DNA of 64,000 nucleotides, from contig NW_003314387.1 in the NCBI RefSeq assembly GCF_000143415.4, forward strand, positions 124,001 to 188,000, written 5' to 3'. Below, in pieces: positions 4,678 through 38,133 of the stretch (position 1 is the stretch's first letter; each line of letters begins with the position of its first letter). The DNA is from Selaginella moellendorffii. Taxonomy: Eukaryota > Plantae > Lycopodiophyta. Made by a program: the position numbers and the translations under genes. Under the pieces are notes generated by a model. The model did no database searches and was not told where the DNA came from. It saw nothing but the letters and a program-made list of their open reading frames with translations.

Positions 4678-5329
4678 GCATGATAGTGAAGGTGTTTGAT
4701 AGACATGGTAAGCTATCACCTAGTGATATTGAAAAACTAGTCTCAATATGGGAGGGTTCTTGTTTAGCTAGTGCAAGATAGAGCAAAAGAGAATTAAAAG
4801 TCAAGCCGAATATGCTCAACTAAAAATACATAAAAATTCCTACCTTATGTCCATTTGACTAAGTACAGGTGTTAAGCCCAATTTACTAACACTTGAACAA
4901 GAAGGGCTGATAAAGAGAACTGACAATACTAATCTTCTACTATTGTGGCAGTAAGGAAAGAGTGTTCGTAAGGACAAACTGACAAATAACTTTCGATACC
5001 CGAAGTCATATTTGCAACAGTTGGAACACTCTTGACATGAAGAAAACTTTTAACAAACTATAAAATAAAAACATTATTTAGTGAAATAAGATTGCAATCT
5101 CTTATATACATTATGATGATAAGCATTATATAGTAAAGTATACCTTTATGTAGTATTAATACAAGTGCCTTCTAGTTAGAAGTTCTAATCTAGACTTGTT
5201 GTTGGAGTTCGTCAAGGTGTTGTTCCCATATCAAAATTCATAAACTAACACCATTCCATATTTAATAAGGTTTTGTGATTGTCATAACTAGTTAGAAGTT
5301 CTAATCTAGGCAAGTATAAGACAAGGGGG

Positions 5330-16936: not shown

Positions 16937-18279
16937 CAAGATGGACCCGAGATGGAGTCCGATATGGACCGAGATGGAGTCCGAGATGGACTTGAGTTGG
17001 AGTCCGAGATGGACTCGAGATGGAGTCCGAGATGGAGTCTAAGATGGACCGAGATGGAGTCTGAGATGGAGTTCGAGATGGACCCGAGATGGAATCCGAG
17101 AAGGACCCAAGATGGAGTCCAAAGTCGAGATCGAGACCGAGACTGGGACCGAGACCGAGACCGAGACTGAGACCGAGACCGAGACTGAGACCGAGACCAA
17201 GGCTGAGACCAAGCCCAAGCCCGAGTCCAAGACCGAGTCCGAGTCTGAGTCCAAGTCCGAGTCCAAGTCTAAGTTCGAGTCTGAGAGGGTGAAAGCCCAA
17301 AGCGTTCGTCTCCCAGACCCTAGGGGGTTTGGTGAGCTCCAAAAGTATAGTAGGGGGAGGACTACAGTGGAGCCAGTTTGGCCAGGAAAGGCCAGTCTGG
17401 CCCAGGAAGGTTGTACCCAGTGTTGGGTGATGAGCTGCGCACTAGGAAGTCCAAGACTAGAGTGAATACGGACTGACAAGCGGGGTAGCCTGGTGAAGTG
17501 TTCAAGAGCCGGCTCTAGTTCCCCTGGGAGATCGACTGGCCGATGCTCCCAGTCCAAGAGTGGGTGGCACTACCTACTTGGATACCTGGCGTGGCTCAAT
17601 GGAACTTTGCCCTAAGCCCATGGCTAGAGCACCTAAAGGCGGAAGGCGGGGAGAGTACTCATGAGGCCCGCGTAGGGCCATGGTGTTCCAAAATGTTGTC
17701 CCAAAGTCCCAGTTTGTGGAAAGGAAGAGGAGTAGCCCTCCGGTGTGGTGACCAAGGACACAGTCACACAGTGAGGAAGTCCTAGAGGACAGTGGGACTT
17801 AGTGGTCGGGCCCGTGGGCCTTGATCCAATGGCAATGCTGGCGAACATGGCCAAGGATAGAAAGGGACTTGGTGGAGACTGGAATGGAGATATTGGGGAA
17901 GGCTATTCCCCATGTCTGCGGGCATCCTAAGGATGCTAGGGAGTGGATCTGGGATGACCACTCATGGGAGAACGACCCAGTCTTAGAGAGACAGGATTGC
18001 AATGTAGGTGGTGTTAGACCACCGATGTGACCAAGGTGAATGAGCGTAGCCTAGCGTAACAGGCTCACATGTCAGTGGTACCTTGGTGTGTCGGTCATGG
18101 GATTAGACACGTGGAGCACTTGGACCAAGTGCAAAGGTTGAGTGGCGGGGATGCCATTCTCGGGGCTAGCAAGCCCAAGTCCAAAACTAGGACTTATGAA
18201 GGTTGTGAGTGAGACTCCTCTAAGTGGTTAGAGGTGTGGCTAAGTGACTAAAGTAGAATGAAAAAATTAGTCACTTACA
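16937..18279 (+). mobile_element. Partial LTR-A in the opposite orientation, fused to the preceding LTR end
   Basis: Begins inside the satellite (gagatggagtcc units) and ends ...tagtcacttaca. Confidence 0.88.
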
Positions 18280-19229
18280 TCAAGCTTAAAAAGGTTGGTT
18301 CGTGCATGGTTTTTATATCCTTGCGTTAGGCCACCGATATATTGAAATAGCGCTAGACTCTGTTTGGCTCCATTTTTCATGCTAGTCCTGGCATTGGGAT
18401 ATTGGGCACTCTAGGACTGTTTCAAGTCACTTCGTGCTCCTGTTCCTTCACTCCTTGAGCTGTATGTTCGAGAGTTGTTATGTGCTCTAGTGCCATTGCT
18501 CCTTGCCTCCATGCTTGGTAGTTTGGCACATTCAGTGGCCGAAGGTGCTATAACTCATGTTCCACTCCACTATCCTTTGGACACCTGGCATGTGGATGTT
18601 CATTTTGCATTTTATGAATGTTGGTGTTGGATATTAGATATATGGGCAATGATGTTCGATGCTTAAGCATATTATTGGGTCATGAGAATTTATGTTAAGG
18701 TGAACTTATATAAAATTATTGGTAGGAAGAAGTTGATTGAGTCTTGAAAGTTTGCATTTCTAGATTAAGAGTCATTCTTTCTCTAGGATGGAAAATTTTC
18801 CACAAATTTTCTTAGGCTTTTCCAATGGCTGATTTGTTGATCATTTTGTCCAAAAACCTTTTCGTTTTCGTAAACCAATACAAATTAGTGAAAGGGTTGG
18901 AGTTGACTTTGGTAATCTTAGACCTTAGTAAGTAGTTTGTATGATGTGCCTGGAAGAAATGCTAACTTTTGGGGCTAAGGCAATTAAGTTGGATAGAGTC
19001 TGGAGTTGGTGTAGAAAAGTGGCCATTACGCTTTTCTAAGAAGGGTGACTCTTATGCTTTTCTTCTATAGTATTGTGCTTGGTTGCAAATTGCACCTTGC
19101 ATATTGTTACACTCTATGACAATAGTGAGCTCTCACTGAACTTGACTTGGTCTTGGTAGCCTTGCGCCTTAGCTGAGGATGGTGATGTCTAACTTGGTTG
19201 TTTGTGTCAGGAATCCCCCAATTCTTGCC

Positions 19230-19376
19230 ACATTCCTGACTCTCGCCGGATTCCTGACCTGCAGACCACATTCCTGAATCTCGAGACACTTCCCTATTCC
19301 TGACTCTCGAGACACTTCCCTATTCCTGACTCTCGAGACACTTCCCGATTCCTGAGTCTCGAGTCACATTCCTGAT
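19230..19376 (+). repeat. U3 tandem repeats (26-bp ATTCCTGACTCTCGAGACACTTCCCT units and ATTCCTGA motifs), also present in the 3' LTR
   Basis: Visible direct repeats upstream of the TATA-like tatagtatatatagg near 19451. Confidence 0.85.
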
Positions 19377-19592
19377 GATGATGTGGCGCCTCCTTGACCT
19401 CAGCTGTATTTAGGCCGTCCTCGTCCAAGAGTGGTGGAGCTTCATCAACCTATAGTATATATAGGTTAGCCTTGTTCCATTTCTCCACAATCTGAATCAA
19501 CACCAGTCTAAGGCCTCTTCTTTGTTTTCACTAGCTTTTTCTCTTTGTCTTTAGCATTTTCCAGTCTTGATCTTGTTGGGGGTCTTGACAGT

Positions 19593-19607
19593 TTGATTCA
19601 GATTGTG
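19593..19607 (+). promoter_or_regulatory. Non-tRNA (self-priming) primer-binding site
   Basis: TTGATTCAGATTGTG is the exact reverse complement of CACAATCTGAATCAA at 19486-19500 in the LTR. No TGG-type tRNA PBS is present. Confidence 0.85.
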
Positions 19608-19681
19608 TTTTTTGCTTTTCTTTTAGCTTGTTTTGATTATTTGATTGCCTTTGTCTTTTCCCCCCTTTCTTTTCTTTCTTC

Positions 19682-20659
19682 TTGCCAATGGAGTCTCCAA
19701 GCCATTCTGATTTCTTTGCCGAAGTCCTTGCAAAAATTCAGTCTGAGAATACCGAGCTGAAGGCAACCCTTCTACGCATGCAGCAGGAGCTTGCTTCACT
19801 TTCGGCTCAAGGATCCAGCAAAGTTCCTGAACCGAAGGTGAGTTTCCCGGCGAAATTTTCAGGCAAGCGTTCGGAGCTTCGTGGATTTTTGAATCAAATG
19901 GAGCTGATCTTTGCACTTCAACATCGGCGGTACCCCACTCCCGAGTCTCAAATCGGCGCGATTGGGACGTTGCTCGAGGGTGCAGCTTTGTCATGGTTTT
20001 CTCCTCTTCTGGAGAAGAGCATGAAAGGGGTCGTGGTTCCGGAGCTGATGGATCTTCAATTGTTCAAAGAGAAGCTCGAAGCATGTTTTGGCGAGACGGA
20101 TCGGGTTCGGGCTGCTACCACAAAGATGAGACGTCTCTCTCAGGGGTCTCGTCCTGCCTCGATCTACGCTGCAGAGTTCCAACTCCTTGCCTTGGACACT
20201 CAGTGGGATGAGCGGGCCCTGATTGACCAATTTCGTTTCGGCCTCAACAACGGTGTCAAGGATTTGTTGCTCACCATGGAGGATCCCAAGGACCTGTCGG
20301 ACGCCATCAACAAAGCTGTTCGATGTGACAATCGTCTCTTTGAACGTCGTCAGGAAAGTCGCCGCGCCGCTGTTTTTCCGTCCCAGACTCAGGAATCCCA
20401 GCTTGAGTCTTCGGGGCATAGTCCTGAACCTACTGCTCCGGTCCCGATGGATATTTCTGGTACTCCCCGACTCATTAGAGGGAAGTTGAGTCCTGCTGAG
20501 AGGCAACGTCGAATATCTCATAATCTTTGCCTCTACTGTGCTGATCCTAATCACAAAGCAGCTGTGTGTCCCAGGAAGCCTCCCCGATTGCTCAAGTTCA
20601 CTCTGCCTCAAAGTCCACCACTGTTGCAGTCGGGAAACGACCCTATCCAAACAGAGTAG
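19682..20659 (+). CDS. gag: Gag polyprotein (PEG10/sushi-like capsid plus CCHC zinc knuckle)
   Basis: Open 325-aa ORF with [25 protein letters not shown] and [14 protein letters not shown]. Confidence 0.93.
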
Positions 20660-20675
20660 GAGCTGTCTGTTTGGA
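20632..20675 (+). promoter_or_regulatory. -1 programmed ribosomal frameshift signal
   Basis: G GGA AAC heptamer in the gag frame (20632-20638), a 7-nt spacer, then a perfect 10-bp stem TCCAAACAGA/TCTGTTTGGA (20646-20655 / 20666-20675). pol lies in the -1 frame. Confidence 0.85.
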
Positions 20676-23600
20676 CTCCCCAAATAAGAATCACTTTTCT
20701 TCCTTATCAAGCTCCTCACCACCTTTCATCAAAGCCACCACCAATTCCCGCAACTTCCGCGTCCCATGTCTCCTTTCTTTCACCGGACAATCAGGACTCA
20801 AGGCTTTGGCGCTACTGGACTCGGGTGCAACTTCCTGCTTCATGGACACAGACTTTGCTGCCCGACATCACGTTCCTCTTTCTCCTACCATACGGGATCT
20901 GAGGGTTGAAGGCATCGGCGGGCATTTTGTGTCTCCATCTTCTGGACTTAGGGAAACGTTGCCCGTTCGAGTACACATCGGGTCCACCGTCACCGATATC
21001 GCCTTCAACATCATCAACAGCAAGTCTTCCTCTGTGGTGCTCGGTCTTCCTTGGTTCCAACTACATCAGCCTCAGATTTGTTGGAAGGACTTACAGCTCA
21101 TCTCTCCCACATCACCATCTCCCACGGCTTCCCCTGGTGTTCATCGAGTCCGAATCAGGAAAAGTTCCCTAAACTCAAGTCGGGGTTCTGTTCCTGACTC
21201 TACGCAGTTTTCATCCTCTTCTTTTTCCTCTCTTCCATCTTACACTGGACAGTATCCTCGTCTCATCATTCCATTTAGTCGTACCCCTCCTCCTATCTCC
21301 ACAATCACTATGAAAGAACTCCTTCATGAAGAACCTCTTTTTCTTTTTGCTTTGCATGTTTCTCCTGTCAGTCTTCCTGAGAAGTATCATGATTTTGGGG
21401 ATGTGTTTGACAAGAAAAAAGCTAGTGTACTGCCTGTTCATCGGCCTTATGATTGTCCCATTGATTTACAGGAAGGAGCGTCACCTCCGTGGGGGCCGAT
21501 CTACGGGTTATCCCCGTCCGAGCTTAAGGCCCTCAAAGAGTACGTGGATGAGAACCTTGCCTCGGGCTACATTCAGCATTCGCAGTCCCCGGCTGGAGTG
21601 CCTGTCTTCTTTGTCAAGAAGAAGGATGGGAGCTTGCGGCTAGTCATCGACTACCGAGGTTTGAACAAGGTGACTGTTCGGAACCGTTATCCGCTGCCCC
21701 TGATCTCGGACCTGTTGGAACACCTCGGCGGTGCCCGCTTCTTCACCAAGATCGACCTCCGTGGAGCATACAACCTGATCCGGATCCGGCCTGGTGATGA
21801 ATGGAAGACTGCGTTCCGAACCCGCTATGGCCACTTCGAGTACACTGTCATGCCATTTGGCTTGACAAATGCTCCAGCGGTTTTCCAACACATGGCGAAC
21901 GACGTTTTTCGGGAGTTTCTTGATCAGATGGTGATCGTCTACCTCGATGACATCCTCATCTACTCAAAAACTTAGGAGGAGCATGACGAACATGTTCGCA
22001 AGGTGCTAGCGAAGCTGCAAGAACACGGCCTATACGCGAAGCTTGAGAAATGTTCCTTTGATCAGCAGTCTGTGGAGTTCCTTGGGTACATTGTCACTTC
22101 TGAGGGTATCACGATGGATCCTGCTAAAGTCAAGACTATTCTCGAATGGGAGCCTCCACAATCAATGTCAGACGTTCAGGTTTTCCTTGGCTTCGCCAAC
22201 TTCTACCGCAAATTCATTGATCACTACTCTGACATTGTCCTTCCTCTCACACATCTCACTCGCAAGGATGTTCCCTTCTCTTGGTCTGCTGCTGCCTAGC
22301 AGGCCTTCGACACACTCAAGGCGGCCTTCAGTTCTGCTCCTGTCTTGATCCATGCTGATTCCTCACAACCTTTCTTCATCGAGGCTGATGCCTCCGACTT
22401 TGCCATTGGTGCTGTGCTATCTCAACTCGGAGCGGATCACGAACTTCATCCGGTCGCTTTCCATTCTCGGAAATTCCAGCCTGCGGAGATCAATTACGAA
22501 ATCCACGACAAGGAGCTTCTTGCCATCGTGGATTCCTTTGGAGAGTGGCGCCGTTTCTTGGAGGGGGCGAGCCATCAAACAACAGTCTGGACGGATCACA
22601 AAAATCTCGAGTACTTTGCCACTTCCCGAGTTTTAAGCCGTCGTCAAGCAAGGTGGGCACAATTCCTGAGTCGGTTTGACTTTGTTATCAAGTACAGACC
22701 TGGAAAGTTTCAAGGCCTTCCTGATGCTCTTTCAAGGCGCTCCTATCTCAGTCTCAGGCCTGGTAATCCTGCCTTCGATCAACAGGATCAAGTTATCCTC
22801 GGTCCTGATCGGCTTCAAGTTATGGCAATTTCCCTGGCCCCTCAGGACTCCTCCTTGATGGATGCAATCAGAAACGATCTTCAATCCGATGATCTTGCTA
22901 GCGACATTTTTCCCCATCTTCAGGTTGGACACCCAGTGACTCCCGACTGCCGGCGATTTGACGAGTTCGAGTTCTTAGATGGCTTATTGTACCGTGGGGA
23001 GCAGCTTTACGTTCCTGAAGGTGATGCTCGAAGGTTGATCCTGATGGCGTGCCACGATAGCCCGACTGCTGGTCACTTCGGCATTGCGAAAACCTATGAG
23101 CTAGTTGCACGGGACTTTTGGTGGCCTCACATGGACGACTACATCAAAGCTTTTGTTACCTCCTATGACACTTGTGCCCGGAATAAGGTACCTCGCCACC
23201 TTCCTTCAGGTTTGCTTCGTTCCCTTCCGGTCCCTTCAGGTCCTTGGGAATCCATCTCCATGGATTTCTTGAGTGATCTTCCGAGTTCTGGAGGCTTCAA
23301 CAGCATTTTAGTCGTGGTGGATCGCTTCACAAAGATGGCGCACTTCTTGCCATGTACCAAGGAGTTTTCGGGCGAGGACATGGCAAAACTGGTATTCAGG
23401 GAAATTTTCCGACTTCATGGGATTCCTACAGATGTGGTTTCGGATCGGGGGCCTCAGTTCATCTCTCATTTCTGGCAACGGTTTTTGCAGCTGCTTGGAG
23501 TGAAGGCCAACCTCTCTTCGGCATATCATCCTCAAACTGATGGGCAGTCCGAGCGAACGATTCAGACGTTGGAACAATTCTTGAGGTGCTTCATCAACTA

Positions 23601-24405
23601 TCATCAGGATAACTGGTTCGATATCCTTCCCCTTGCTGAGTTCTCCTATAACAACTCTGTTCACTCCTCTCTTTGAGTTTCCCCCTTCTTTGCGAACTCT
23701 GGCCGAAATCCCCGATTTAATCTCTCACTTCCTTCTCCATCTGAATCCTCTCGTTCAAATCCCCGCTCTGAATCATTTATCTCCAACCTTCAGGAAATCC
23801 ACAACTCCATCTCCTTCCACCTCCATCGTGCTCAGGAATCTCATAAAACATTTGCCAATGTCCATCGTCAGGATTGTCCCCCTTACAATATCGGGGATAA
23901 AGTCTGGCTCCTCAGGCGAAATATCTCCACCACCAGGCCCTGTCCAAAACTCGATTTCAAACGCCTTGGTCCTTTCCCTATCACTGCCATCATTAATCCT
24001 GTCACCTATCGCTTTGCACTTCCCTCCTCATATCAAATTCACCCCATTTTTCACTCCTCTCTCCTTGAGCCTTATATTCCCAGTCCTATTCCAAATCAGG
24101 TCATTCCTCCACCTCCACCAGTGCAGCTCGAGGATGGGTCTGAGTACGAGGTTCAGGACATCCTTGATTCCAAGATTTCACGATCTAAACTCTACTATCT
24201 GGTGGACTGGAAGGGTTATAGACCTGAGGAAAGCACTTGGGAACCTGCGGACAACCTGATTCATTCTCCTGACCTTGTTCAGGACTTCCACCGCCGCTAT
24301 CCTTCTCGTCCCAGTCCTCATTCTTTTTCTCCATCTCCCATCCCTCGCCGCTCATCTCATCCTCCTCTTCGTTCTCGTTCACATCCTCGTTCCACTCGTT
24401 CTTGA
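20638..24405 (+). pseudogene. pol: Pol (PR-RT-RNaseH-IN-chromodomain) with three in-frame nonsense codons
   Basis: LLDSGA, YLDD, EADASD, HHCC/DDE integrase and YEVQDILD..YLVDWKGY..STWEP all lie in one frame. Stops at 21973, 22297 and 23674. Confidence 0.95.
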
Positions 24406-27400
24406 GGAGGGGGTGCTGTCAGGAATCCCCCAATTCTTGCCACATTCCTGACTCTCGCCGGATTCCTGACCTGCAGACCACATTCCTGAATCTCGAGACA
24501 CTTCCCTATTCCTGACTCTCGAGACACTTCCCTATTCCTGACTCTCGAGACACTTCCCGATTCCTGAGTCTCGAGTCACATTCCTGATGATGATGTGGCG
24601 CCTCCTCGACCTCAGCTGTATTTAGGCCGTCCTCGATCCAAGAGTGGTGGAGCTTCATCAACCTATAGTATATATAGGTTAGCCTTGTTCCATTTCTCCA
24701 CAATCTGAATCAACACCAGTCTAAGGCCTCTTCTTTGTTTTCACTAGCTTTTTCTCTTTGTCTTTAGCATTTTCCAGTCTTGATCTTGTTGGGGGTCTTG
24801 ACAGTTTGAGGTTGAGATGTTGGTACTCGTACTATAGCTTGTCTATCAAGAGGTTGTGTACCAATATGAGTTCATCTCATAGTTTTCACTTTAGTTTCAA
24901 CTCAGTGTTGATTATGCATAGCTAGCCTTTTCAAGGCATGCTCAAAGCTAGTGGCTAAATGCATTAATGAGCTTATTACGGTTGAGTTGGATTTGAGTGG
25001 TCATTTAGTTATGTTTGTTCATGAACCTTTATTTTATACTTGAGGTATTACGTTCATGTTGGATGACTATATGACTTAATGATATGAGTTTAGTGTTTGG
25101 GACTTGTGAAGCAAGTTAAAGAATGATTGTTAGTTGCTTTGTGACTAGTGATTACTTGTAAACTTTGTCAAGCACTTGCTTTGCTCGATGATGATTTAGC
25201 AGTGATAGATTTGCTTTACCAGATGGTGTTGCGGAGGATTATGTCATTAGACTTACATGGTTTTTCCATGTTAGTATGTTGACTTTACCTCTATTGATAT
25301 CATTTGGTTGCGTTTATTCCGTAGTGTTAGATTTCATGGAGTCTTGGATGTGGTGATTCACTTCTTGATGATATATTATTTATAGCTGAGTATTGTTGGA
25401 GGATTGGTCTCAAATATTGAGTAAAGTATCTTTGACTTTGGTTAGCTTGGTTGTTAGAGAGTTTTGGGTAGTGATTCACTCTTGCTTTCTTTTATCTTTG
25501 TTTTGGTGTTGATGGTATTGAAGTGATGCCTTGTCACTGACAATATTGATGTTGAGATTTGAGTGAAATGAGATGTCTCTTCTTAAGATTGATATTGAGT
25601 TTCATTAGTCTTGATGAAGATAGTGTTGATGATTTGGCTATAAATTTGTGTTATTGACATTCGTGCATTTGCTAGTTAGCAATAATGTTGGTGTTCAAAT
25701 GAACTGAGTGAAAAGTTGAGTTAGTTGTGTTCTAAATAAGATTGCTTAATAGGGTTTGAGCTTTAGCTTTTCCTTGAAAAGTGATTTAATCATGGATTAT
25801 GCTATCTATATAAAAAGAAGAGTTAGTGATTGATATTGAAATGTTTGAATCCCGGTTGGATTTAAGTTAGGGATATATCAATCATTGATGATTCTTCTTG
25901 TACTTGTTATAAAGTGAGTTATGTCTTGCTATAGATGGATTCATAAAAGATCAATTTAGTGATCACTTGTTGAGTGTAACTTCAATATGCTTAGCTTTTG
26001 GATTGATGCAAATATGCTCTTCATTAGCTTTAGCATTATGAAGTTTGGCTTATAGATATGTTGAGAAGGATATTGTGGGTTGTACCATGATTTCTTCTTT
26101 AGCATTGAAGTCAGGTCATGTAAGATTTGTGATCATTGTTAAGCAAGATTTGGCTATAGGCTTCTTCAAATTTTTGGTTCCTTGAGTTTTTATGCTCATT
26201 ATTCCATTTGTTAGGAGTTGTTGGGGGAAGGCATTCTAACTCATAGCTTCAATGTTGAAGTTAGTAATTGTATCTAGCAACTATTGGTGATGATTGACTA
26301 TCATCTAAAATAATTGATTATCCTTATCAAAGGTTTTGCTTGATTATTGTTGATTTAGAGAGATTTGCTATTTTTCAGGATGGTGGATTCTTTCTTTGAT
26401 GATAATTATACATCTCTCTATTGATGGGATGATTGATGATATTTTATAATGGTTAGTTGTTTTCTTTGATTGCTTATGGCTTTTTGCAATACCACATGTT
26501 CTTTGTGGTTTTTTCTGAATTGGTCTCTTGGGTTTGAGACATCAATAGGATGTTGCTGACATTTGCTTAAGAAACTCTGGTTCCTTCGTATTGTTGACTG
26601 AGATCTAGTCAGATTGACTAGTGCAATACTTGGCATAAACAAGTGTTTGTTGGTCTTACCGCATTCATATTATTCTGTTGATTGTTGCTTGAGTTAGCTT
26701 TGATAGATTCGGATATTTTTTTTTTTGGGTGATACATTTGTGAGCATTTTGGTTGCCAGTCAATGATACTTTGTGTTCTTTGAGTTATCTTTGGTAAGCT
26801 ATTTGGTATACTGTCTGCAATCTTTGGTAGTTCAGTTTTATCATTGAGTTTCCTTGATAATACACTGGCTATTGAATTTTGTTGGATAGTGAATCCTATG
26901 TTTCCAACTATTGTGATCATGGTGGTTCTTTTACTCTAATACTGGTTTATCAGATGCTAACTTACTTGGAATACTTTTGTGTTCTAATCTAAGATTTATT
27001 CACTAATAATTAAGTCTCTTAAATATCATTGTTTCTGACTTTGATATTATCCATCTATTGATCTTTGAATTTGGGCTAGTATAGGCAGACTAGCTTTGGC
27101 ACTTCATATGTAGAGTAAAATCTTTAGTCATGGGGTAGCTACTGTCGACTAATCACATAACCCGGCTCTCTGTTGATGTTCCTTATTCCGTTCAAAGGGT
27201 ATGACTGTGTAAACAACCCTAACTGCCTATTTACAACAGTCTATCTAAACTTTACTGACAGGTTTGGTTTCTTTGCTTATGAGGGTTGGGGCCTCTAACT
27301 TCTCTCTCTATATCCCTACAGGTAGGGGTGTATCACACTTTTGTAAGCTGGGTGACACCTAGAGCAACAAAGGTGGCTGACTCCGTTGGTCATTTCCTTG

Positions 27401-28449: not shown

Positions 28450-30051
28450 TTGGTATTAGAGAATACATCTCAGTGAGTACTATTCAATGAGATTGGGCAA
28501 CTAGTCTCATTGCATACACAAAGATGAAAATGATGATTTGAGTGGGTACACGTTTAGGTGCAAAGACTTCACATTCATTCCTTAGGTATGGATTTAGTTA
28601 CCTTTTTGTTCCATATTATATGAGCTTGCTCTTGGGCTTATAAGAAGGATTGAGTTGTTCCATTTGCACGAGTTTGTGTTTGGGCTTGTAAGTGAGGCAT
28701 ATTAGCAACTCAATATTACACTTTGAGTTGGTAAGAAGGTATACCATTTTGCACGAGTTTGCGCTTGGGCTCGTGAGTGAGGCATATTAGCAACTCAAGG
28801 TTAGACTTTGAGTTGGCAAGATTAATGTTAGCCTATTGGTGATTCCATGAGTTGTTCCATGTACTATGGGTAAAAATAAACCTCTCTTAGATTTGCTATA
28901 AGTGGCAAATAGGCTAGTCTGTAGTTGTTTAGCATGGCACTAGTAGATCCTTCCTAAACATGATTATAAATGGATCAATCAAGACTGTAGGGATTAATCT
29001 ATTGGTTCAAGTAGTCATTGCCACACTCTCTCATAAATTTTTCTTGGATTGAACTGAAGGCAGTGCGAAAGCAAGCTTGAGGTTTAGTCAAAAGTAGAGT
29101 CAAAAAATAGAGTTATCAGGGATGAAGGATCAAATATGTAAATCATCTTCTCTTTTTGGAAAAATGATTTGTAACGAGGTGTTAACTCATTGCTTGCGTT
29201 CACATTATGCAATCAAGAGTGCCTATCTTGTTGCATATTGGTTATGGTGGTATTACAAATGGTGAGTTATAAGATGGATAGTAGTAAACTATTTTGTCTA
29301 GGCTTGCTATTGAAAACTTGGGTTACAATGCTTAATTATTTTCCGGGGAACCTTACTATTGCTTTTTGAGTAGCTTAGTGTTGAATTAAGTTTTGAGTTT
29401 TGTCAGAAAAAGAGTGACATAAGCTAGTTTGTGTTGTGAACAAAAGTTGGTAATGTTAGTTATAAATCTCTTTTGGTGGAGTGTGGCAATTATGTTACAT
29501 TTTGTCGAATAGAGTTAACATTTGATACTCAAGTAAACTTATTGTAAGTTGTGTTAGAGCTATCCACGGCCTTATCATTTGGCTACTTTGCTGCTCCCTC
29601 CCTTGGAGCTTTCACTTTTGCCAACTTGGAGCATTTGGGAATCTATCCTTGGAAGCCCACTTCCCTTCTCACAATCTGTTAGTATCTAATACATTAATGT
29701 TCCATGCCTAACTTTGCGATTTGGATTTTTTCCAATGAACTCTATAGCCCACATTTAGCCACTAGTCTTTTACTTTTATTCGTTGATTGTTGCACTGAGC
29801 AACATAGGGTCATTACCTCCATTCTCAAAGTATCTTTTTGGTTTTGGCGTTGGATTCAGGTAGAGAGAGTATACTGTGAATGGAGTGATTATTTTTTTGG
29901 ATGATGTGAATAAAATAATTCTTGCAAATAAAACCTCTAGTAGTAACCACAACTAATTTCTTCACTTTTAAAACAATGCCTTTGTTTTGAAAAGTCGTGT
30001 ATTTTCCTTAGAAAGTTATTTGCCGGTCACTTTAGGACGGCCAATTTAGGA

Positions 30052-30412
30052 AAGTATCCCGTTGCGACTGAGCTCACCGCCAATGCAGAGAATGCCAGGC
30101 GAGCTCTCATGTGCTTGTTTGGATGTGACGAGTCAACCGTCACCAAGGAGATCAAGGAGGACCCGGAGACACGCAATCTATATCGTGGCTTCTCCAGGTT
30201 CATGCTCGAGGACTTGTACGAACACAAGAGCTGCAAGAATCTCCCGTCAAAGTCGGCCAAGAAGAAGCTGTGCAGCCAGGTTGCCTTCCTCATGATCCTC
30301 AGGAACCGTGCATACTCGGCCATGGTGGAGTGGCTCTTCCCTTTGCAGCTGCGCATTTCCATCCACCCGCATCCAAACAGAGGTCCCAAGTATGGCATCA
30401 ACATCATCCATT
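30052..30412 (+). pseudogene. Internal fragment of an isocyanide (isonitrile) synthase, Dit1/PvcA family, fungal-like
   Basis: Translates to YPVATELTANAENARRALMCLFG...LYRGFSRFMLEDL...KKKLCSQVAFLMILRNRAYSAMVEWLFPLQLRISIHPHPNRGPKYGI. The YRGFSRFMLEDL and R.SIH.H...PK.GI motifs match, from memory, the C-terminal half of fungal DIT1_PvcA domains. Confidence 0.8.
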
Positions 30413-31309
30413 CCTGGCAAGGGTGTGTCAAAGGCTTTACTTTGCTAAGTCCTAAAGGTGCTTACCACTAGTAAGTTTCTTTAGCATTTTCTACTATAGG
30501 CTCTGTCCACGGCCCAACTTTGCGACCCTCCCATGGGTCTCTCCTAAAGAGTACTTTCTTGGACTTACTATACCATCATTATTAGTCTAATTGATTTCCT
30601 TTTATGTGTTCTTCCCACTTGGTTACCTTGACCAAGCCCCACCATCATCAATAGTTCAAATTAACACTTTGAACTACGAACTTTATTCCTTAACATCACC
30701 AGGACCTTGTCCTTGCTTAGCCATAAGATCACCTAGTGATTTAACCTTGGCACCTTAATAGGTTTGCCAATAGGTATTAGGTCTTCCAGACCTTTAAGTT
30801 GTTCACCATGACCCTGGGGGTATCCCTCACACTTGGCGGTGCACCTAAGCCAGCCCTTCTAGCCAAAGGTCCATAACAACTAAGATTAGGTGTCCCCATC
30901 TCATTCATCACATCCTTGATGCCACTTGCACCAAAGTGTTCGAGTTAGATATCCCAAGCTTTTATACTAAACAATCTAACTGTGTATCATGACTCTGAGG
31001 CATCCCCCACTTGGCGGTGTGCCCAAGCTAGTCTCTTTACTAAAAATCCATGACTACCGAAAAATAAGTGTCCTTATATTCCAAACCATCACCACAACTT
31101 AGTGATTTGGGACTCGAACCCAAGCACTAGAGGGTTGGGACTCAAACCCAACCTCCGTATATGCATCTACGAATAGCATCACCCTAGATGTCTAGCATGA
31201 CTCCCCATGCCGGTGCACCAATTTATACCCAAAGCGTGCTATGGATCATAACTTAGGAACCTAATCCCTCCAAATTGCCAAGTCCTCTCATTTGACAAGT
31301 CACCCACTT

Positions 31310-32490
31310 TAATGGCCATATTGGCTCTAGCCTTCTTCGGGTAGAGATATTCCCTCAAAAAGTGTCCCACTTCACCACAATGCTGCTAACTGACTTGCCC
31401 TTCTTATCCATGGGTTTGTCTCTTTTTGCTTGACTCCTCCACATACTCGCTCGCTAACCACTAGATCTACCTTTTCGGAACCCCGAAGACTCATTCTTAG
31501 AGAAACTCTTCTTGAATTTCCCTTTGCTATATGTTCCCCTTGGTTTGGCCCCTTTGCTAAACATGGACCCTAACCCCGTCGTATTCCCCTTTCGCAGGTT
31601 ATCATTGAAATGCACCTTGATAGCCACATCTAACACTTCTTTGTAATTGGTCGGGTTCTAATGCATCACCTCACCGCGAGCCTAGGTTTGCAAGCCTGAT
31701 ATGAAGGCATGGAACGCATCCATATCACCCATATCCATGACCAATATCCTCTTTGCCATTAATCCATTCACATACTCTTGAATGGTTCCGATCTGCTTCA
31801 GCCTACTCAACTCATCCCTTAGATGCAGAGTAGCATTTGGAGGAACGTATGTCGTGCGGATCCTCGCCTTCATCATTTCCCAAGTGGCCACCAGTCCTTC
31901 GTTGGCCTCTGTCGTTCTCCACCAACACTTGGCATTATTTGCCAAGTATGGTTTTGCACATGGGACCTTCTCCGAGCTCGGTAATTGCAATTCTCAAAAG
32001 TAGTCCTCCATATCATAAAACCAATCCTCCACTGCCTTATAGTTGTTCACTCCCTTGAAGACCAAAGGGGGCTTTGGTTTGTACTTGGGAACTGCCTGAG
32101 GGATTGATTCCACTTCGGTTTGTTTGACCTTGTTTGGTTTTGCCTCAGTCCCTACCGAAAGATCCACACCTTCTACGCTACCAGCATCTGTAGTCTTTTG
32201 CTTTTTCTTCCACTTCTCGTCACGCTTTAGCTTGCATACGAGAGTTTTCAGCAGGGCACTGGTCTGTGCCAATTATCCTTCTAAAACATCCAATCAAGCC
32301 TTGGATGACCAAACCTTGCCACCAGACTCCTGTTTGGAAGTTTCCTCACTGAAGTCCTCCTCATACAAGGATTCCTCATCCATAGCCTCTTGTTTGACTG
32401 GAGGCTCCAGCTCTGGAGCAGATTTTGTCTCTACCTTGGTTCGTTTCCGCCCTACCTTTACCATCTCCCAGCAATCCGCTTCTATCCTTC
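31310..32490 (-). pseudogene. gag: Retrotransposon gag pseudogene
   Basis: ORF pieces 31994-32272, 31682-31990 and 31454-31636 are in frame and separated by stop codons. Confidence 0.85.
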
Positions 32491-33651
32491 GCTAGAACTA
32501 AGGAAAAGGCTCTGATACCAAATTGTAAGCCACAAATTTTTCCTTTCCAATTTGCCAGCTTACCTCATCTATCCGACCAACACTACCTTAGCTTTTGCTA
32601 AGTTCCCTCGCCAAGGTTCCCGCCTATTGTACCAGCTCCTACTTAGTCCTACTTGGTTTTAGCTACTCACTACACGAGCAATGGAGCATTAGCCATCCAT
32701 CCATGGATTCCCAAATCTCTCCCAATCCCCCTCCCCGGGTTAGACTAGACTTAAGGTTCGGCTACACTCCCCGCAGGCACAAGCAGCCAAGCACACCAAG
32801 CCTCCAGGTTCCTAACACCCTTTGGTACAACAAAACTTGATCATGGGACCATCTAAATCCCAAGCCTTGGGTGCAACACTTGCTTCAGGACATCGGGGCG
32901 AAACACCATGGCTTAACGGCCTGGTATGGGTACCTCTACACCCCCACTTCCATCCCGAACGGAAGGCCCAAGCCCCTAGGAAGGGCGAGGACCAATGAGC
33001 CACAAGGTACTCAAGTGGGGCACCACTCCACATGAGCCGGGAGCACCGCAATCAGTTTCCCTTTCGGTTTCCCTTTCAGGAGTGGGAGTTGCTCTTGAGC
33101 ACTTCCTTGGGTGGCCCCTCTGGCACCACCCGAGTCCATGCTCACTCCCACCCAAGGCCCCTTGGCCCTAGTCTCAACCTCAAGTTAGTTTGGAAGCACC
33201 ACTGGAGAGTTCCTTCAAAACTAGTTCCTGGACCTCACTATATTTTGGGAAACCCCCCCCCCCCCCCCCCCCCCCCCGGGAGATGCACATTTTGGGCTTT
33301 CACCCCTTGACCCGTATTAGTACTCGGACTTGGTCTCGGACTCGATCTCGGACCTGACTTTGGACTCGGTCTCGAACTCAGTCTCGAACTCGACTTCGGA
33401 CTCGACCTTAGACTCGGTCTTGGACCCAATTCGGATCTTGGACTCTATCTCAAACTCGGTCTCGAACTCAGTCTTGAATCAGTCTCCAATTTGGCCTTGG
33501 ACTCGATCCTGGACTCTATCTCAAACTCGGTCTCAGAGTTGGTCTTGGACTTGATCTCCGACTCCATCCCATCCGATGAACTCTTTGTCATTTCAGTTAT
33601 GTTTTCGGGGATCCTTTAGCCTACGACACCTCGGGGAGTTGATTCCTTACA

Positions 33652-35021
33652 CACTTGCATCACAGTCCCGTCTCTCCAAGACTGGGCCATCCATCCACAA
33701 GTGATCTTTCCAGATCCACTCCTTAGCATCCTTAAGATGCCCATAGACATGGGGAATAACCTTCCCCAATATCCCTTTGTCAGTTCCTACCAAGTCCCTT
33801 TTCTGTCTATAGCCATGTTCGCCAACACTACCACTAGATCAAGGCTAACAAGCCCGGCCACTAAGTCCCATTGTCCTCTAGGACTTCCTCACCATGTGAC
33901 CGTATCCTTAGTCACTATACTAGAGGACTGCTCCTCCTCCTTTCCCCAGTTTAAGATTTCGGGACAACATTTTGGAACACCGTGGCCCTATGTGGGTACT
34001 CTCCCCACCTTCCACCTTTAAGTGCTCTAGCCATGGGCTTAGAGCAAGGTTCTGTTAAACCACGCCAAGTATCCAAGTAGGTAGTGCTTCCCACACTTGG
34101 ACTGGGAGTATCAGCCATTCGATCTCCCAGGGGAACTAGAGCCAGCTCTTGAATACTTCACTAAGCTACCCCGCTTGTCGATCTGTATTCACTCTAGCCT
34201 TGGACTTCCCAGTGGTTATCCCATCACCCAACATCTAAGTACAGCCTTCCTGGGCCAAATTGGCCTTTCCTAGCCAAACTGGCTCCATTGGAGTCCTCCC
34301 CCTTACTATACTTTTGGAGCTCACCAAACCCCCCAGGGTTTAGGAGATGAACACTTTGGGCTTTCACCCTCTTAGACTTGAACTCAAACTCAGACTCGGA
34401 CTCAGACTCGGACTCGGGCTCGGACTCGGGCTCGGGCTTGGTCTCGGTCTCGGTCCTAGCCTCGGTCTCGGTCTCGGTCCCGATCTTGGTCTCGGTCTCA
34501 GTCCCGGTCTCGGTCTCGGTCTCGACTTTGGACTCTATCTCGGGTCCTTCTCGGACTCCATCTCGGGTTCTATCTCAGGTCCATCTCAAACTCCATCTCG
34601 GATTCCATTTTGGACTCCATCTCAGTCCATCTCGGACTCCATCTCGGGTCCACCATCTCGGACTCCATCTCGGACTCCATCTCGGTCCATCTTGGACTCT
34701 ATCTCGAGTCCATCTCGGACTCCATCTCGGACTCTATCTCAGACTCCATCTCGGACTCCATCTCAGACTCCATCTCGGGTCCATCTCGGACTCTTCCATG
34801 TGTCATATGTTGGTCCTCTTGTGTCTCTTTTCTATAGCCTCACTTATTGTTGGCTTCATATTTGTTCCTCGAGCACTTCATCGGGAGTTCCACTCCCACT
34901 CTTGACCTTTCAAGTCGGAGCTTTTAGTCCAAACATGTTATGCTCATTTGGCTTTCGCTTCAGCCACTACCACGTGGCACCCTTTTGGCTCCACTTTGGG
35001 GCTTAGGATTTGTGTCTTACA
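33652..35021 (-). mobile_element. Partial LTR-A into which the LTR-C element inserted
   Basis: Collinear with 3008-4677 and ends tgtgtcttaca. Confidence 0.88.
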
Positions 35022-36404
35022 TACAATTGTTAACTAGCAAATGCATAAATTCTAATAACACAAAGTTATAGCCTAAATATTAACACCATTTTCATTGAGA
35101 CTAATGAAATACAATATTAATCTTCAATGAGCACAACTAATTATCAACTATCTAAATCATGATAAATGAAAATATCCAACTTTCTAAATATGCTTATGGA
35201 GAAACATCTCATCTCCTTTTAATCTTAATAATCTCCATATTACACTCCTATAATCTTTATTAGCTATCTAGGAATATAGAGACCACTGTCAAGTAGCCAA
35301 AAACACCAAGCCTCTATATTCCTAACATCTTGTGGTCTAGCAAGACTTGTTTATTAGAGCATTGGACTCCCATTTGCTCCAATACCAAATATACCACACT
35401 TTATCTCTCTCTTTTTAAATTAATTTGAAAAGGGGGAATTATTTGATGAATGAGCCTTTAGTGGTTATTTTATCCACATATATCCCCCAAGATTCTACAG
35501 TGATAATATATTTAAATTTTATCCCATGATCACATATATTACACAACTTTTTACTAAAGTTGCTTGTGTAATGAGTATCTTTGAGCTAGAGATTGGATCA
35601 TATACCTCAATTTACACTTTACCCAACTTAATAGTTATATTAATCCTAGCTTTATTCAGGTAGAGACATTCTCTTAAGAAGTGTTTGGACTCCCTACAAT
35701 TGAAACATACATTATTCCCCATATTATTAATGGAGTTGGTTTTCGTATCAAAGGGTTTTTCCCTTTTTGTAGTGCACATAAATTTGGAGCCAAACTCTAA
35801 GCTCATTGCACTACAAAACGAGGGTCTAATACACTCTCAATCCTATGAGAATCAGCTCCCTATATCTAGCATCGAGATGCAAATTGGTGTTAGATAGTGT
35901 TTGGCATGATTTCAGCATATTGGTGGCCTAACATGAGGAGAAGGGTACCCTACCCCACCAACTAGAGTAGTATAGAACTTGGGCTTAAACCCAAGTTAAA
36001 TGTAGAACAAAAAATAATATAATTCAACAAAAGTCAAACTAATGTCTTAGATAGTTAGTTATACATTTCAACCATTATCCCTACTATATATTTAGAATTC
36101 TTCATATCCCCCACCCCGTTCAGGAACACATGCTTTGGGCTTTCACCCCTAGCCACCCTTAGTATTAAGAGTTAGTCTCTAGGATAAGCATGAAAACTTA
36201 TTAAATATAGAATGGTGCTAGATTGTGAATCTGAGAGCAGGAATAATGCCATAGGGTTCAGGACACTCTCTACATTCTATAGATATGCCCTCTTGAACTA
36301 GATTTAAAACGGAACCAACATATAGGACATGATAGTATGGGTGGACACAGTAAGCTACCATATAAAGATATTTGAGAGACTAAACTCAATATTGTGGGGG
36401 TTTC

Positions 36405-38133
36405 TGTGAGACACAAAATCCCTAGGCCCTAAAGTGGAGCCGGAAGGATGCCACGTGGTAGTGACCAAAGCGAAAGCCAAACGAGCGTAACATGTTTGGA
36501 CTAAAAGCTCCGACTTGAAAGGTCGAGAGCGGGAGTGGAATTCCCAACAAAGGGCTCGAGGAACAAGCACGAAGCAAGTAATAAGCGAGACTCCAAAAAG
36601 GGACCCAAAAGGACCAACACATGACATGTGGAAGTGTCCAAGATGGACCCGAGTTGGAGTTCAAGATGGAGTCCGAGGTGGAGTCCGAGGTGGAGTTCGA
36701 GATGGAGTCCGAGATGGACCGAGACGGAGTCCGAGATGGAGTCCGAGGTGGAGTTCGAGATGGAGTCTGAGATGGAGTCTGAAGTGGAGTCCAAGATGGA
36801 GTCCGAGATGGACTCAGACAGAGTCCGAGATGGACTCAGACAGAGTCCGAGATGGAGTCCGAGATGGACTCAGACAGAGTCCGAGATGGAGTCCGAGATG
36901 GACCGAGACGGAGTCCGAGATGGAGTCCGAGATGGACTGAGACAAAGTCCGAGATGGAGTCCGAGATGGACCCAAGATGGAATCCGAGATGGAGTCCGAG
37001 AAGGACCCGAGATGGAGTTCGAGGTCGAGACCGAGACCGGGACCGAGACCGGGACCAAGACCGAGACCGAGATTGAGACCGAGACTGAGGCGGAGGTCGA
37101 GACCGAGCAGAGTCCGAGTCCGAATTCGAGTCTGAGAGGGTGAAAGCCCAAAGCATTCATCTCCCAGACTCTGGGGGGTTTGGTGAGCTCCAAAAGTATA
37201 GTAAGGGGGAGGACTGCAGTGGAGCCAGTTTGGCCAGGAAAGGCCAGTTTGGCCCAGGAAGGCCAGACCCAGTGTTGGGTGATGAACTGACCACTAGGAA
37301 GTCCAAGATTAGAGTGAATACGGACTGACAAGCGGGGTAGCCTGGTGAAGTGTTCAAGAGCCGGCTCTAGTTCCCCTGGGAGATCGACTGGCCGATGCTC
37401 CCAGTCCAAGTGTGGGTGGCACTACCTACTTGGATACCAGGCATGGCTCAACGGAACCTCGCTCTAAGCCCATGGCTAGAGCACCTAAAGGCAGAAGGTG
37501 GGGAGAGTACCCACAGGGCTTGTGTAGGCCCATGGTATTCTGAAATGTTGTCCCGGAGTCCCAAATGGGGGAAAGGAGGAGGAGCAATCCTCTAGTGTAG
37601 TGACTAAGGATACAGTCACATGGTGAGGAAGTCCCAGAGGACTATGGGACTTAGTAGTCGGGCCTGTGGGCCTTGATCTAGTGGCAGTGTCGGCGAACAT
37701 GGCCATGGACAGAAAAGGGATTTGGTAGGAACTGACAAAGGGATATTGAGGAAGGCTATTCCCCATGTTTGTAGACATCCTAAGGATGCTAAGGAGTGGA
37801 TCTAGGTTGACCACTCGTGGACGGATGGCTCAGTCTTGGAGAGATGGGATTGTGATGTAAGTGGTATTGGACCACAAGTGCGGCAAAGGTAAATGGGCAT
37901 GGCCTTAGCGTAACGGGCCGATATGTCAATGGTACCTTTGGGTGTTGGTCTTGGGACTGGACACGTGGAGCACTTGGACCAAGTGCAAGGGATGAGTGAC
38001 ATGGATGCCATTCTCGGGACTAGCAAGTCCCAAGTCCCGAATTGGACTTAAGGAGGTTGTGAATGAGACTCCTCCAAGTGGTCAGAGGTGTGGTTAAGTG
38101 ACTAAAGTAGAATGGAAAAATTAGTCGCTTACA
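36405..38133 (+). mobile_element. Solo LTR-A
   Basis: TGTGAGAC...GCTTACA termini; TSD GTTTC/GTTCC (one transition). Confidence 0.92.

What the first reader, a model, noticed from the sequence alone, without database searches (positions are those of the whole stretch)
29847..30425. Fungal-type isocyanide synthase (Dit1/PvcA) fragment inserted inside a retroelement: possible isocyanide pathway in a plant
Seen: compared with the homologous retroelement interior at 13650-13700, this copy carries an extra ~580 bp with no TSD. About 200 bp is AT-rich and about 370 bp is GC-rich, stop-free coding sequence antisense to the element. It reads ...LYRGFSRFMLEDL...VAFLMILRNRAYSAMVEWLFPLQLRISIHPHPNRGPKYGI. 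Knowledge: these motifs match the C-terminal half of DIT1_PvcA isocyanide synthases (yeast Dit1, Pseudomonas PvcA, Aspergillus XanB/CrmA), which as far as I know are characterised only in bacteria and fungi. Inference: the fragment has host-like GC3 bias and keeps its CpGs while the flanking TE is C-to-T eroded. It was therefore probably copied fairly recently from an intact gene elsewhere in this genome, implying a horizontally acquired isocyanide synthase and possibly undescribed isocyanide metabolites.
Basis: partly seen in the sequence, partly recalled or inferred. Interest (0 to 1): 0.9.

Follow-up and report, generated by a model that had tools for sequence, protein, structure and literature searches.

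The report
Dead DIT1 gene scrap patched into retroelement
A 588-base patch inside an old, decayed retroelement of the spikemoss Selaginella moellendorffii contains an exact 360-base copy of the middle of one of the plant's own, already annotated, fungal-type DIT1/isocyanide-synthase genes; it is most likely a scar of DNA repair, not a working gene.

Summary
Compared with a sister copy of the element at 13370-14548, window 29838-30425 is an extra 588 bp. Bases 30056-30415 (+) read stop-free and hit Pfam DIT1_PvcA (E 1.5e-33, profile 121-236 of 273).

The window is Selaginella moellendorffii scaffold GL377691.1 (assembly GCA_000143415.2). The 360 bp are 360/360 identical to two tandem, intact, intronless 521-aa genes on scaffold GL377593.1 (RefSeq "spore wall maturation protein DIT1"). 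They are about 95% identical to two other family members, one of them 161 kb away on the same scaffold.

The AT-rich part (29852-30047) comes from an unrelated locus and looks like the 3' end of an abundant transcript. The insert is therefore a two-donor mosaic. It has no TSD, TIR or poly(A). Both outer junctions share about 5 nt with one pentamer of the host element.

I read it as templated filler from microhomology-mediated repair or template switching, which left a promoterless 120-codon fragment.

The parent family is real, multi-copy, and groups with chytrid fungi in my tree. It is already in RefSeq and UniProt. A 2018 survey lists ICS proteins in "one species of moss" without naming it. 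This scan has flagged the family 17 times on other DNA of this genome. The fragment adds no evidence about isocyanide chemistry.

The parts
29539..29837 (-). Left flank: degenerate retroelement (copy B), homologous to copy A 13370-13669
   Evidence: BLASTN 76% identity; CpG o/e 0.24; very high k-mer depth in a DNA run, so a high-copy repeat
29838..29851 (.). 14 bases of unassigned junction sequence (T/G-rich). Either short filler or element sequence that copy A lacks
   Evidence: Not aligned to copy A; not part of the piece-1 donor match, which starts at 29852
29852..30047 (+). Piece 1: AT-rich 196 bp copied from an unrelated locus. It looks like the last codons, stop and 3' UTR of an abundant transcript, plus downstream DNA
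   Evidence: A 156-nt contig of run X3 (depth 195, 0 differences) covers 29852-29933, preceded by different GC-rich sequence. It ends about 18 nt after an AATAAA. An 817-bp contig of DNA run X4 covers 29852-30047 (6 differences) with unlike flanks on both sides. Absent from the DIT1 loci L001-L003 and L005
30048..30055 (.). Inner junction, 8 bases. AG at 30053-30054 also fits the DIT1 donor (2-nt microhomology). A 14-bp tandem duplication (30024-30051) abuts it
   Evidence: family D5
30056..30415 (+). Piece 2: 360 bp (120 codons) of a DIT1/PvcA-type gene, residues about 313-432 of the 521-aa parent. No start codon of the gene, no promoter, no C-terminus
   Evidence: 360/360 identical to L002 and L003 6938-7297; 95% to L001 and L005; Pfam DIT1_PvcA E 1.5e-33, profile 121-236/273. 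Contigs of X1, X3, X4 and X19 match up to 30415, then continue as the parent gene does
30416..31300 (-). Right flank: the retroelement resumes exactly where copy A continues (A 13678-14548). 30416-30425 is probably element sequence belonging to an internal repeat unit
   Evidence: BLASTN 80.6%; repeat D2 30420-30445 / 30498-30523; CpG o/e 0.31
31239..32272 (-). Broken gag region of the host retroelement. It gives the element's orientation
   Evidence: Retrotrans_gag E 2.5e-10 at 31685-31993 minus strand. gag is split into several stop-free pieces. No pol homology between it and the insert

Best explanation
The 588-bp insert is a mosaic of templated filler DNA. It is a non-functional scrap, not a gene.

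Proposed sequence of events (the route is inferred):
1. A break or stalled replication fork arose in an old, decayed retroelement copy.
2. The free 3' end primed on an unrelated locus through a short microhomology (GATTC) and copied 196 bp of the 3' end of another gene.
3. It switched template to one of the tandem DIT1 genes on scaffold GL377593.1 and copied exactly 360 bp of mid-gene coding sequence.
4. It re-annealed to the element through a second microhomology (ATTCC[T]) at the same pentamer. Almost no element sequence was lost.

This is SDSA-type double-strand-break repair or MMBIR/FoSTeS-type template switching.

Shown: both donors exist elsewhere; the DIT1 copy is exact; transposon and retrocopy hallmarks are absent; the host element is old and eroded. 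Inferred: the repair route and the microhomology use.

The parent genes are intact members of an annotated, expanded, fungal-type DIT1 family in Selaginella moellendorffii. The fragment is simply fallout from that family.
For: Genome identity: 22,031 bp of the window are 100% identical to GCA_000143415.2 GL377691.1.

DIT1 donor: 360/360 identity to two tandem genes encoding XP_002975629.2/XP_002975630.2. The exact 119-aa core is also in XP_002975631.2. The parent is full length, with DIT1_PvcA 1-269/273.

Breakpoints: contigs from four runs leave the window at 30415 and continue with the parent's next bases.

Second donor: 29852-30047 is found with different flanks in DNA and (probably) RNA contigs.

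Age contrast: the insert has 0 substitutions and CpG o/e 0.66. The host element has a broken gag, no pol, CpG o/e 0.24-0.31 and only 76-81% identity to its sister copy. The patch therefore arrived long after the element.

No TSD, TIR, LTR, Helitron ends or poly(A).

Junctions: copy A reads CGATTCCATGGCAA at the site. Piece 1 starts GGATTCAGG. Piece 2 ends CCATTCCT and is followed by GGCAA.

Independent support: a 618-bp contig of a 2020 run spans element, piece 1 and the first 27 bases of piece 2 with 0 differences.

Precedent: simple or mosaic filler DNA, and gene fragments copied into breaks by SDSA, are described in plants (PMC2686159, PMC3445842).
Against: - No true empty-site allele was available. 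The pre-insertion sequence is inferred from a sister copy only 76-81% identical, so the microhomologies and the status of 29838-29851 and 30416-30425 are uncertain.
- The right junction (30415/30416) is not bridged by any contig listed. It rests on the Sanger assembly and on the exact resumption of element collinearity.
- The donor locus of piece 1 could not be identified, and run X3 is only guessed to be RNA.
- Published plant filler DNA is usually shorter and often copied from nearby. Here one donor is on another scaffold.
Confidence: 0.72

Rival explanations
1. Gene-fragment capture by a mobile element (Pack-MULE, Helitron, CACTA or similar) that then inserted into the retroelement.
For: Plant transposons do carry mosaics of fragments from several genes (background in PMC3445842). 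The insert is such a mosaic.
Against: - No terminal inverted repeats, no TSD and no Helitron-type ends.
- Nearly the whole insert is accounted for by the two donors, leaving only 14 + 8 + up to 10 bases for any carrier.
- No other copy of the mosaic was seen. Contigs holding either piece elsewhere have other flanks.
Confidence: 0.08
2. Capture by reverse transcription. Either the retroelement picked up host RNAs by template switching while it was being copied, or a chimeric retrocopy was inserted.
For: Both pieces match transcribed sequences, and piece 1 looks like a 3' UTR. The DIT1 donor has no introns, so a cDNA origin cannot be excluded by splicing.
Against: - The insert is antisense to the element.
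- It shows 0/360 substitutions while the element is heavily decayed. It was therefore not acquired when the element transposed.
- There is no poly(A) and no TSD.
- Piece 1 runs about 114 bp past the end of the transcript contig.
- The piece order (3' UTR first, internal coding piece last) is the reverse of what target-primed chimeras give.
Confidence: 0.08
3. Assembly or cloning chimera: the junctions do not exist in the plant.
For: The window is from a Sanger shotgun assembly that holds both haplotypes. The DIT1 piece is a multi-copy sequence where assemblers can mis-join. The right junction is not bridged by any listed contig.
Against: - A 618-bp contig from a separate 2020 run crosses the left and inner junctions without a mismatch.
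- The element resumes exactly at the base where it left off relative to copy A. A mis-join would not reproduce that.
- A three-part 14 + 196 + 8 + 360 bp mosaic is not a typical chimera.
Confidence: 0.04
4. A functional unit: the fragment is expressed, either as a truncated protein (ORF 30109-30471) or as antisense RNA from the retroelement that feeds RNA silencing of the DIT1 family.
For: A 120-codon ATG ORF exists. The piece is perfectly complementary, in element sense, to at least two or three DIT1 mRNAs. The DIT1 family appears in probable RNA contigs.
Against: - No contig joins the fragment to element sequence in the probable RNA runs. RNA-like contigs leave the window at both ends of the piece.
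- The ORF covers under half of the domain.
- With zero substitutions there is no signal of selection either way.
Confidence: 0.05

Closest known systems
Filler DNA / templated patches from double-strand-break repair in plants (maize p1, wx, R-r; SDSA gene-fragment insertions in grasses: PMC2686159, PMC3445842)
   Same: An insertion with no TSD or transposon ends, copied from sequences still present elsewhere in the genome. It is a mosaic of more than one donor, has short homologies at the joints, and creates a gene-fragment pseudogene.
   Different: At 588 bp it is longer than the classical maize fillers (8-131 bp). At least one donor lies on another scaffold rather than nearby. There is essentially no accompanying deletion. 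The host is a lycophyte.
Selaginella moellendorffii DIT1 genes XP_002975629.2 / XP_002975630.2 / XP_002975631.2 (RefSeq 'spore wall maturation protein DIT1', GL377593.1)
   Same: 360/360 nucleotide identity over residues about 313-432, the same frame, and Pfam DIT1_PvcA.
   Different: The window holds only 120 of 521 codons. It lacks the N-terminal 312 residues, the first 120 and last 37 profile positions, any start codon of the gene and any promoter. It lies antisense inside a retroelement.
Yeast Dit1 / Pseudomonas PvcA / Aspergillus ICS enzymes (PF05141; PDB 3E59, 9DHM)
   Same: The parent protein matches PvcA and L-Tyr/L-Trp isonitrile synthase structures by sequence (E 1e-25 to 2e-28). Like yeast Dit1 (536 aa), it is a single-domain protein with an N-terminal extension (520 aa).
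   Different: The product in the plant is unknown. Yeast Dit1 probably makes N-formyl-tyrosine, not an isocyanide (PMC7345447). No partner enzyme was examined here.
Pack-MULE / Helitron transduplicated gene fragments
   Same: Multi-gene mosaics of exon pieces embedded in repeat-rich DNA.
   Different: No TIRs, TSD, Helitron termini or additional copies were found.

Membership tests
DIT1_PvcA (PF05141) isocyanide synthase / Dit1 family | Significant match to the family profile above the curated cutoff | tested here: met
   Fragment: 116.9 bits against a cutoff of 26.4, E 1.5e-33. Parent P0155: 278.6 bits.
DIT1_PvcA (PF05141) isocyanide synthase / Dit1 family | Complete domain in an intact reading frame with a start codon (a functional gene) | tested here: not met
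   The fragment covers profile 121-236 of 273 only and residues about 313-432 of 521. Homology stops sharply at 30056 and 30415. The parent genes do meet this feature.
DIT1_PvcA (PF05141) isocyanide synthase / Dit1 family | Enzymatic formation of an isonitrile or N-formyl amino acid | not testable with these tools
   Needs expression and assay of the parent gene.
Templated filler DNA (microhomology-mediated DSB repair / template switching) | Insert absent from a homologous reference site, with no TSD, terminal repeats or poly(A) | tested here: met
   The reference is a paralogous element copy, not the allele.
Templated filler DNA (microhomology-mediated DSB repair / template switching) | Donor sequence(s) still present elsewhere in the genome, and the insert may be a mosaic | tested here: met
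   DIT1 donor 360/360 identical. Piece 1 is found with other flanks in DNA contigs, but its locus is not identified.
Templated filler DNA (microhomology-mediated DSB repair / template switching) | Microhomology at the junctions | tested here: inconclusive
   GATTC (left) and ATTCC[T] (right) both match the pentamer region CGATTCCA of copy A. AG sits at the inner junction. The true pre-insertion sequence of copy B is unknown.
Transposon-carried gene fragment (Pack-MULE / Helitron) | Terminal inverted repeats or Helitron ends, a TSD, and multiple copies | tested here: not met
Processed retrocopy | Poly(A) tail, TSD, loss of introns | tested here: not met
   No poly(A) or TSD. Intron loss is uninformative because the donor gene is intronless (1566-bp gene for 521 aa).

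The most novel reading that the evidence does not exclude
The retroelement-embedded piece is perfectly matched and antisense to the DIT1 genes. If transcribed from the element, it could yield antisense RNA or siRNAs that act in trans on the tandem DIT1 genes. A repair scar would then serve as a regulator of a horizontally acquired gene family.
Probability: 0.04. Interest if true: 0.6.

Novelty: new member of a known kind. Interest (0 to 1): 0.27.

Why it matters
The fragment is a clean, datable example of how plant genomes scatter gene scraps. It is a two-donor patch with zero substitutions, sharp breakpoints and apparent microhomology, in a lycophyte, where such events are little documented. 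It also warns against a mistake: a stop-free, GC-rich, CpG-rich 'coding' island inside a transposon can be repair debris rather than a gene.

The larger question is what an expanded, fungal-type DIT1 family makes in Selaginella. That question remains open and worthwhile. It belongs to the intact genes on other scaffolds, which are already annotated and which this scan has flagged many times. This fragment adds no evidence about that chemistry.

Tried and rejected
- **Intron idea.** I tested whether the AT-rich 200 bp is an intron of the parent gene. The parent is intronless, and the piece is absent from ±6-8 kb around three DIT1 loci.
- **P0001 as donor.** I tested P0001 (XP_002967756.2, the best representative hit). 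It is only 95% identical in DNA. The same-scaffold paralogue (L005) is also 95%.
- **Annotation of the fragment.** The fragment's ORF (30109-30468) has no matching gene product on record.
- **Other copies.** The AT-rich piece has no other copy in the window and none in the scan's notes by sequence. No other DIT1 pieces are in the window.
- **A closer reference copy.** The fetched loci hold no closer copy of the host element to serve as an empty-site reference.
- **Dating the host element.** No LTR pair of the host element could be identified. The region is a nest of fragmented repeats.
- **Literature.** 'Selaginella' with 'isocyanide synthase' gave 0 papers. 'Selaginella' with 'dityrosine' gave one irrelevant paper. 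Only Lim et al. 2018 mentions a 'moss'/plant ICS in passing.
- **Allelic haplotype.** The region could not be fetched.

Full report
**1. What is in the sequence**

Window 29838-30425 is an insertion relative to a sister copy of the same repeat.
- Copy B 29539-29837 aligns to copy A 13370-13669 (76%).
- Copy B 30426-31300 aligns to copy A 13678-14548 (80.6%).
- Only 8 bases of A (CGATTCCA) correspond to the 588 bases of B.

The insert has two compositional halves: GC 0.33 over 29852-30047 and GC 0.54 over 30056-30415. It hits Pfam DIT1_PvcA at E 1.5e-33, profile positions 121-236 of 273.

The host repeat is a retroelement whose gag lies on the minus strand (Retrotrans_gag, 31685-31993, E 2.5e-10). 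CpG observed/expected is 0.24 and 0.31 in the flanks against 0.66 in the coding piece.

**2. Which genome, and where the coding piece came from**

A PPR protein encoded at 49160-51187 is found exactly in Selaginella moellendorffii assembly GCA_000143415.2, scaffold GL377691.1. The fetched 22,031 bp are 100% identical to window 39160-61190. The window is therefore GL377691.1:124001-188000.

An exhaustive profile search with the fragment found a 520-aa protein at 98% identity. The next-best hits were at 50-60% identity. Their names:
- The best hits are S. moellendorffii 'spore wall maturation protein DIT1'.
- The next are chytrid fungi: Blyttiomyces, Cladochytrium, Irineochytrium, Phlyctochytrium and Geranomyces.

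The Selaginella family has at least six clusters at 90% identity, with about 38 member sequences across old and new annotations and both haplotypes.

The fragment is closest to P0155 (XP_002975629.2 and XP_002975630.2). At the DNA level, window 30056-30415 is 360/360 identical to two tandem genes 14 kb apart on GL377593.1 (L002 and L003, 6938-7297). The only mismatch in the 363-bp BLAST alignment is at 30055, outside the clean copy. The exact 119-aa core also occurs in XP_002975631.2.

Two other paralogues are only 95% identical: L001, and L005, which lies 161 kb away on the window's own scaffold.

The donor gene is an uninterrupted 1566-bp ORF. Its protein covers DIT1_PvcA 1-269/273 and matches PvcA and isonitrile-synthase structures by sequence.

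Public-run contigs support the breakpoints. Contigs of X1, X3, X4 and X19 match the window up to 30415 and then continue CTCTAGTGGCAGC..., exactly as the parent gene does after position 7297.

**3. The AT-rich half has a different origin**

Piece 1 is not found within 6-8 kb of the DIT1 loci examined. It is not an intron, because the donor has none. In one search:
- A 156-nt contig of run X3 (guessed to be RNA; depth 195) matches 29852-29933 without a difference. It is preceded by unrelated GC-rich sequence and stops about 18 nt after an AATAAA.
- An 817-bp contig of DNA run X4 matches 29852-30047 (6 differences) with unlike flanks on both sides.

All three frames close within about 50 nt of 29852. 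I read piece 1 as the last codons, stop and 3' UTR of an abundant transcript, plus about 114 bp of downstream DNA. This is an inference, and its locus could not be searched with the tools available.

**4. Anatomy of the joints**

| Part | Coordinates | Reading |
|---|---|---|
| Host element | up to 29837 | Left flank |
| Unassigned T/G-rich bases | 29838-29851 (14 bp) | Filler, or element sequence that copy A lacks |
| Piece 1 | 29852-30047 | Begins GGATTCAGG |
| Inner junction | 30048-30055 (8 bp) | AG is shared with the DIT1 donor; preceded by a 14-bp tandem duplication |
| Piece 2 | 30056-30415 | Ends CCATTCCT |
| Host element | from 30416 | Resumes GGCAA... |

Copy A reads CGATTCCATGGCAA at this site. 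Both outer joints therefore share about 5 nt (GATTC, ATTCC[T]) with the same pentamer of the target. Almost no target sequence is lost.

There is no TSD, no terminal inverted repeat, no Helitron-like end and no poly(A). Bases 30416-30445 belong to an internal repeat unit of the element (family D2), so they are probably native element sequence.

**5. Mechanism**

The pattern has five features:
- two unlinked donors;
- exact copies with sharp ends;
- short homologies at the joints;
- no target duplication or loss;
- no mobile-element hallmarks.

This is the pattern of templated filler DNA. A 3' end from a break (SDSA) or a stalled fork (MMBIR/FoSTeS) primes on ectopic templates by microhomology. 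It switches once, then returns to its own locus. Plant precedents include simple and mosaic filler DNA at maize p1, wx and R-r (PMC2686159). SDSA-mediated insertion of gene fragments as filler is also described (PMC3445842).

The timing argues against capture during retrotransposition. The insert has 0/360 substitutions and keeps its CpGs, while the element around it is decayed. The insert is also antisense to the element.

A retrocopy is unlikely. There is no poly(A) or TSD, and the 3' UTR-like piece lies upstream of the internal coding piece. A transposon carrier is unlikely because the two donors account for nearly the whole insert and no other copy of the mosaic appears.

An assembly artefact is unlikely. 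An independent 618-bp contig from a 2020 run crosses element, piece 1 and the first 27 bases of piece 2 with no mismatch. The element also resumes at exactly the right base. However, the right junction itself is not bridged by any contig listed.

**6. The horizontal-transfer claim**

I built a quick maximum-likelihood tree of 13 Selaginella, 9 chytrid, 15 Dikarya, 1 oomycete and 7 short bacterial-type sequences (SH-aLRT supports).
- The fragment falls inside a Selaginella clade (100).
- That clade joins the chytrids (82).
- Together they sit within a fungal clade (99).

This agrees with a fungal, chytrid-like origin, at moderate support. Among named hits, no other plant appeared. That list is not a survey of plants.

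The family is not new to databases: RefSeq and UniProt name it. Lim et al. [quoted passage not shown] The text does not name the species. I found no paper on Selaginella DIT1 function.

Yeast Dit1 probably makes N-formyl-tyrosine rather than an isocyanide (PMC7345447). The chemistry in the plant is therefore open.

This scan has already flagged the family on other DNA of this genome: 17 notes, including tandem arrays. I reused two of their leads, the species and the 2018 paper, and checked both myself.

**7. Verdict**

The object in this window is a dead 120-codon scrap in a two-donor repair patch. The 'undescribed plant isocyanide pathway' is neither shown by it nor new as a gene catalogue entry.

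Confidence that it is a non-functional copy of the GL377593.1 DIT1 genes is about 0.97. Confidence in the microhomology-mediated templated-repair route is about 0.7.

Noticed in passing
window 19205-24809: An apparently young, intact Ty3/Gypsy element. The LTRs 19205-19596 and 24417-24809 are 99.5% identical. Long + strand ORFs carry gag, protease, RT, RNase H and integrase domains.
   Followed up: partly
window 46900-47646 (-), 49160-51187 (+): Ordinary host genes at the right of the window: a Methyltransf_16 lysine methyltransferase and a 676-aa PPR protein. The PPR protein served to place the window on GL377691.1.
   Followed up: yes
L005 3001-4548 (GL377691.1:315399-316946): An intact 515-aa DIT1 gene (XP_002991977.2) lies on the window's own scaffold, about 161 kb from the fragment. 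It is only 95% identical to the fragment, so the nearer paralogue was not the donor.
   Followed up: yes
L002 and L003 (GL377593.1:1744273-1771798): The two donor genes encode the same protein (P0155) and are both identical to the fragment over its 360 bp. They sit 13,960 bp apart. The 13.6-kb loci differ at 1571 positions when compared base by base without alignment, so the surrounding repeat units are not simple exact copies.
   Followed up: partly
window 2739-4680, 11417-12880, 16931-18279, 33648-35022, 36405-38133, 55053-56600, 59224-60863: A high-copy 1.4-2 kb repeat, probably an LTR, present seven times in both orientations. It contains internal tandem repeats (for example 3731-4445, 36636-37136, 59457-59875).
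   Followed up: no
window 30083-30415 in run X19: A run labelled with a different organism code (organism B) holds the DIT1 piece with 1 difference in 333 bp, but holds the flanking element only at 90-95%. It may be a close relative, or a sample containing S. moellendorffii-like DNA.
   Followed up: no
window 30024-30051: A 14-bp tandem duplication (CGGTCACTTTAGGA / CGGCCAATTTAGGA) lies at the end of piece 1, right before the inner junction. It may be a slippage footprint of the same repair event, or it may already be present in the donor.
   Followed up: no
proteins P0002, P0008, P0111, P0160, P0163, P0187: Several S. moellendorffii gene models carry partial or fused DIT1 segments. One is fused with a mannosyltransferase domain. 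Other broken or chimeric DIT1 copies therefore exist in this genome.
   Followed up: no
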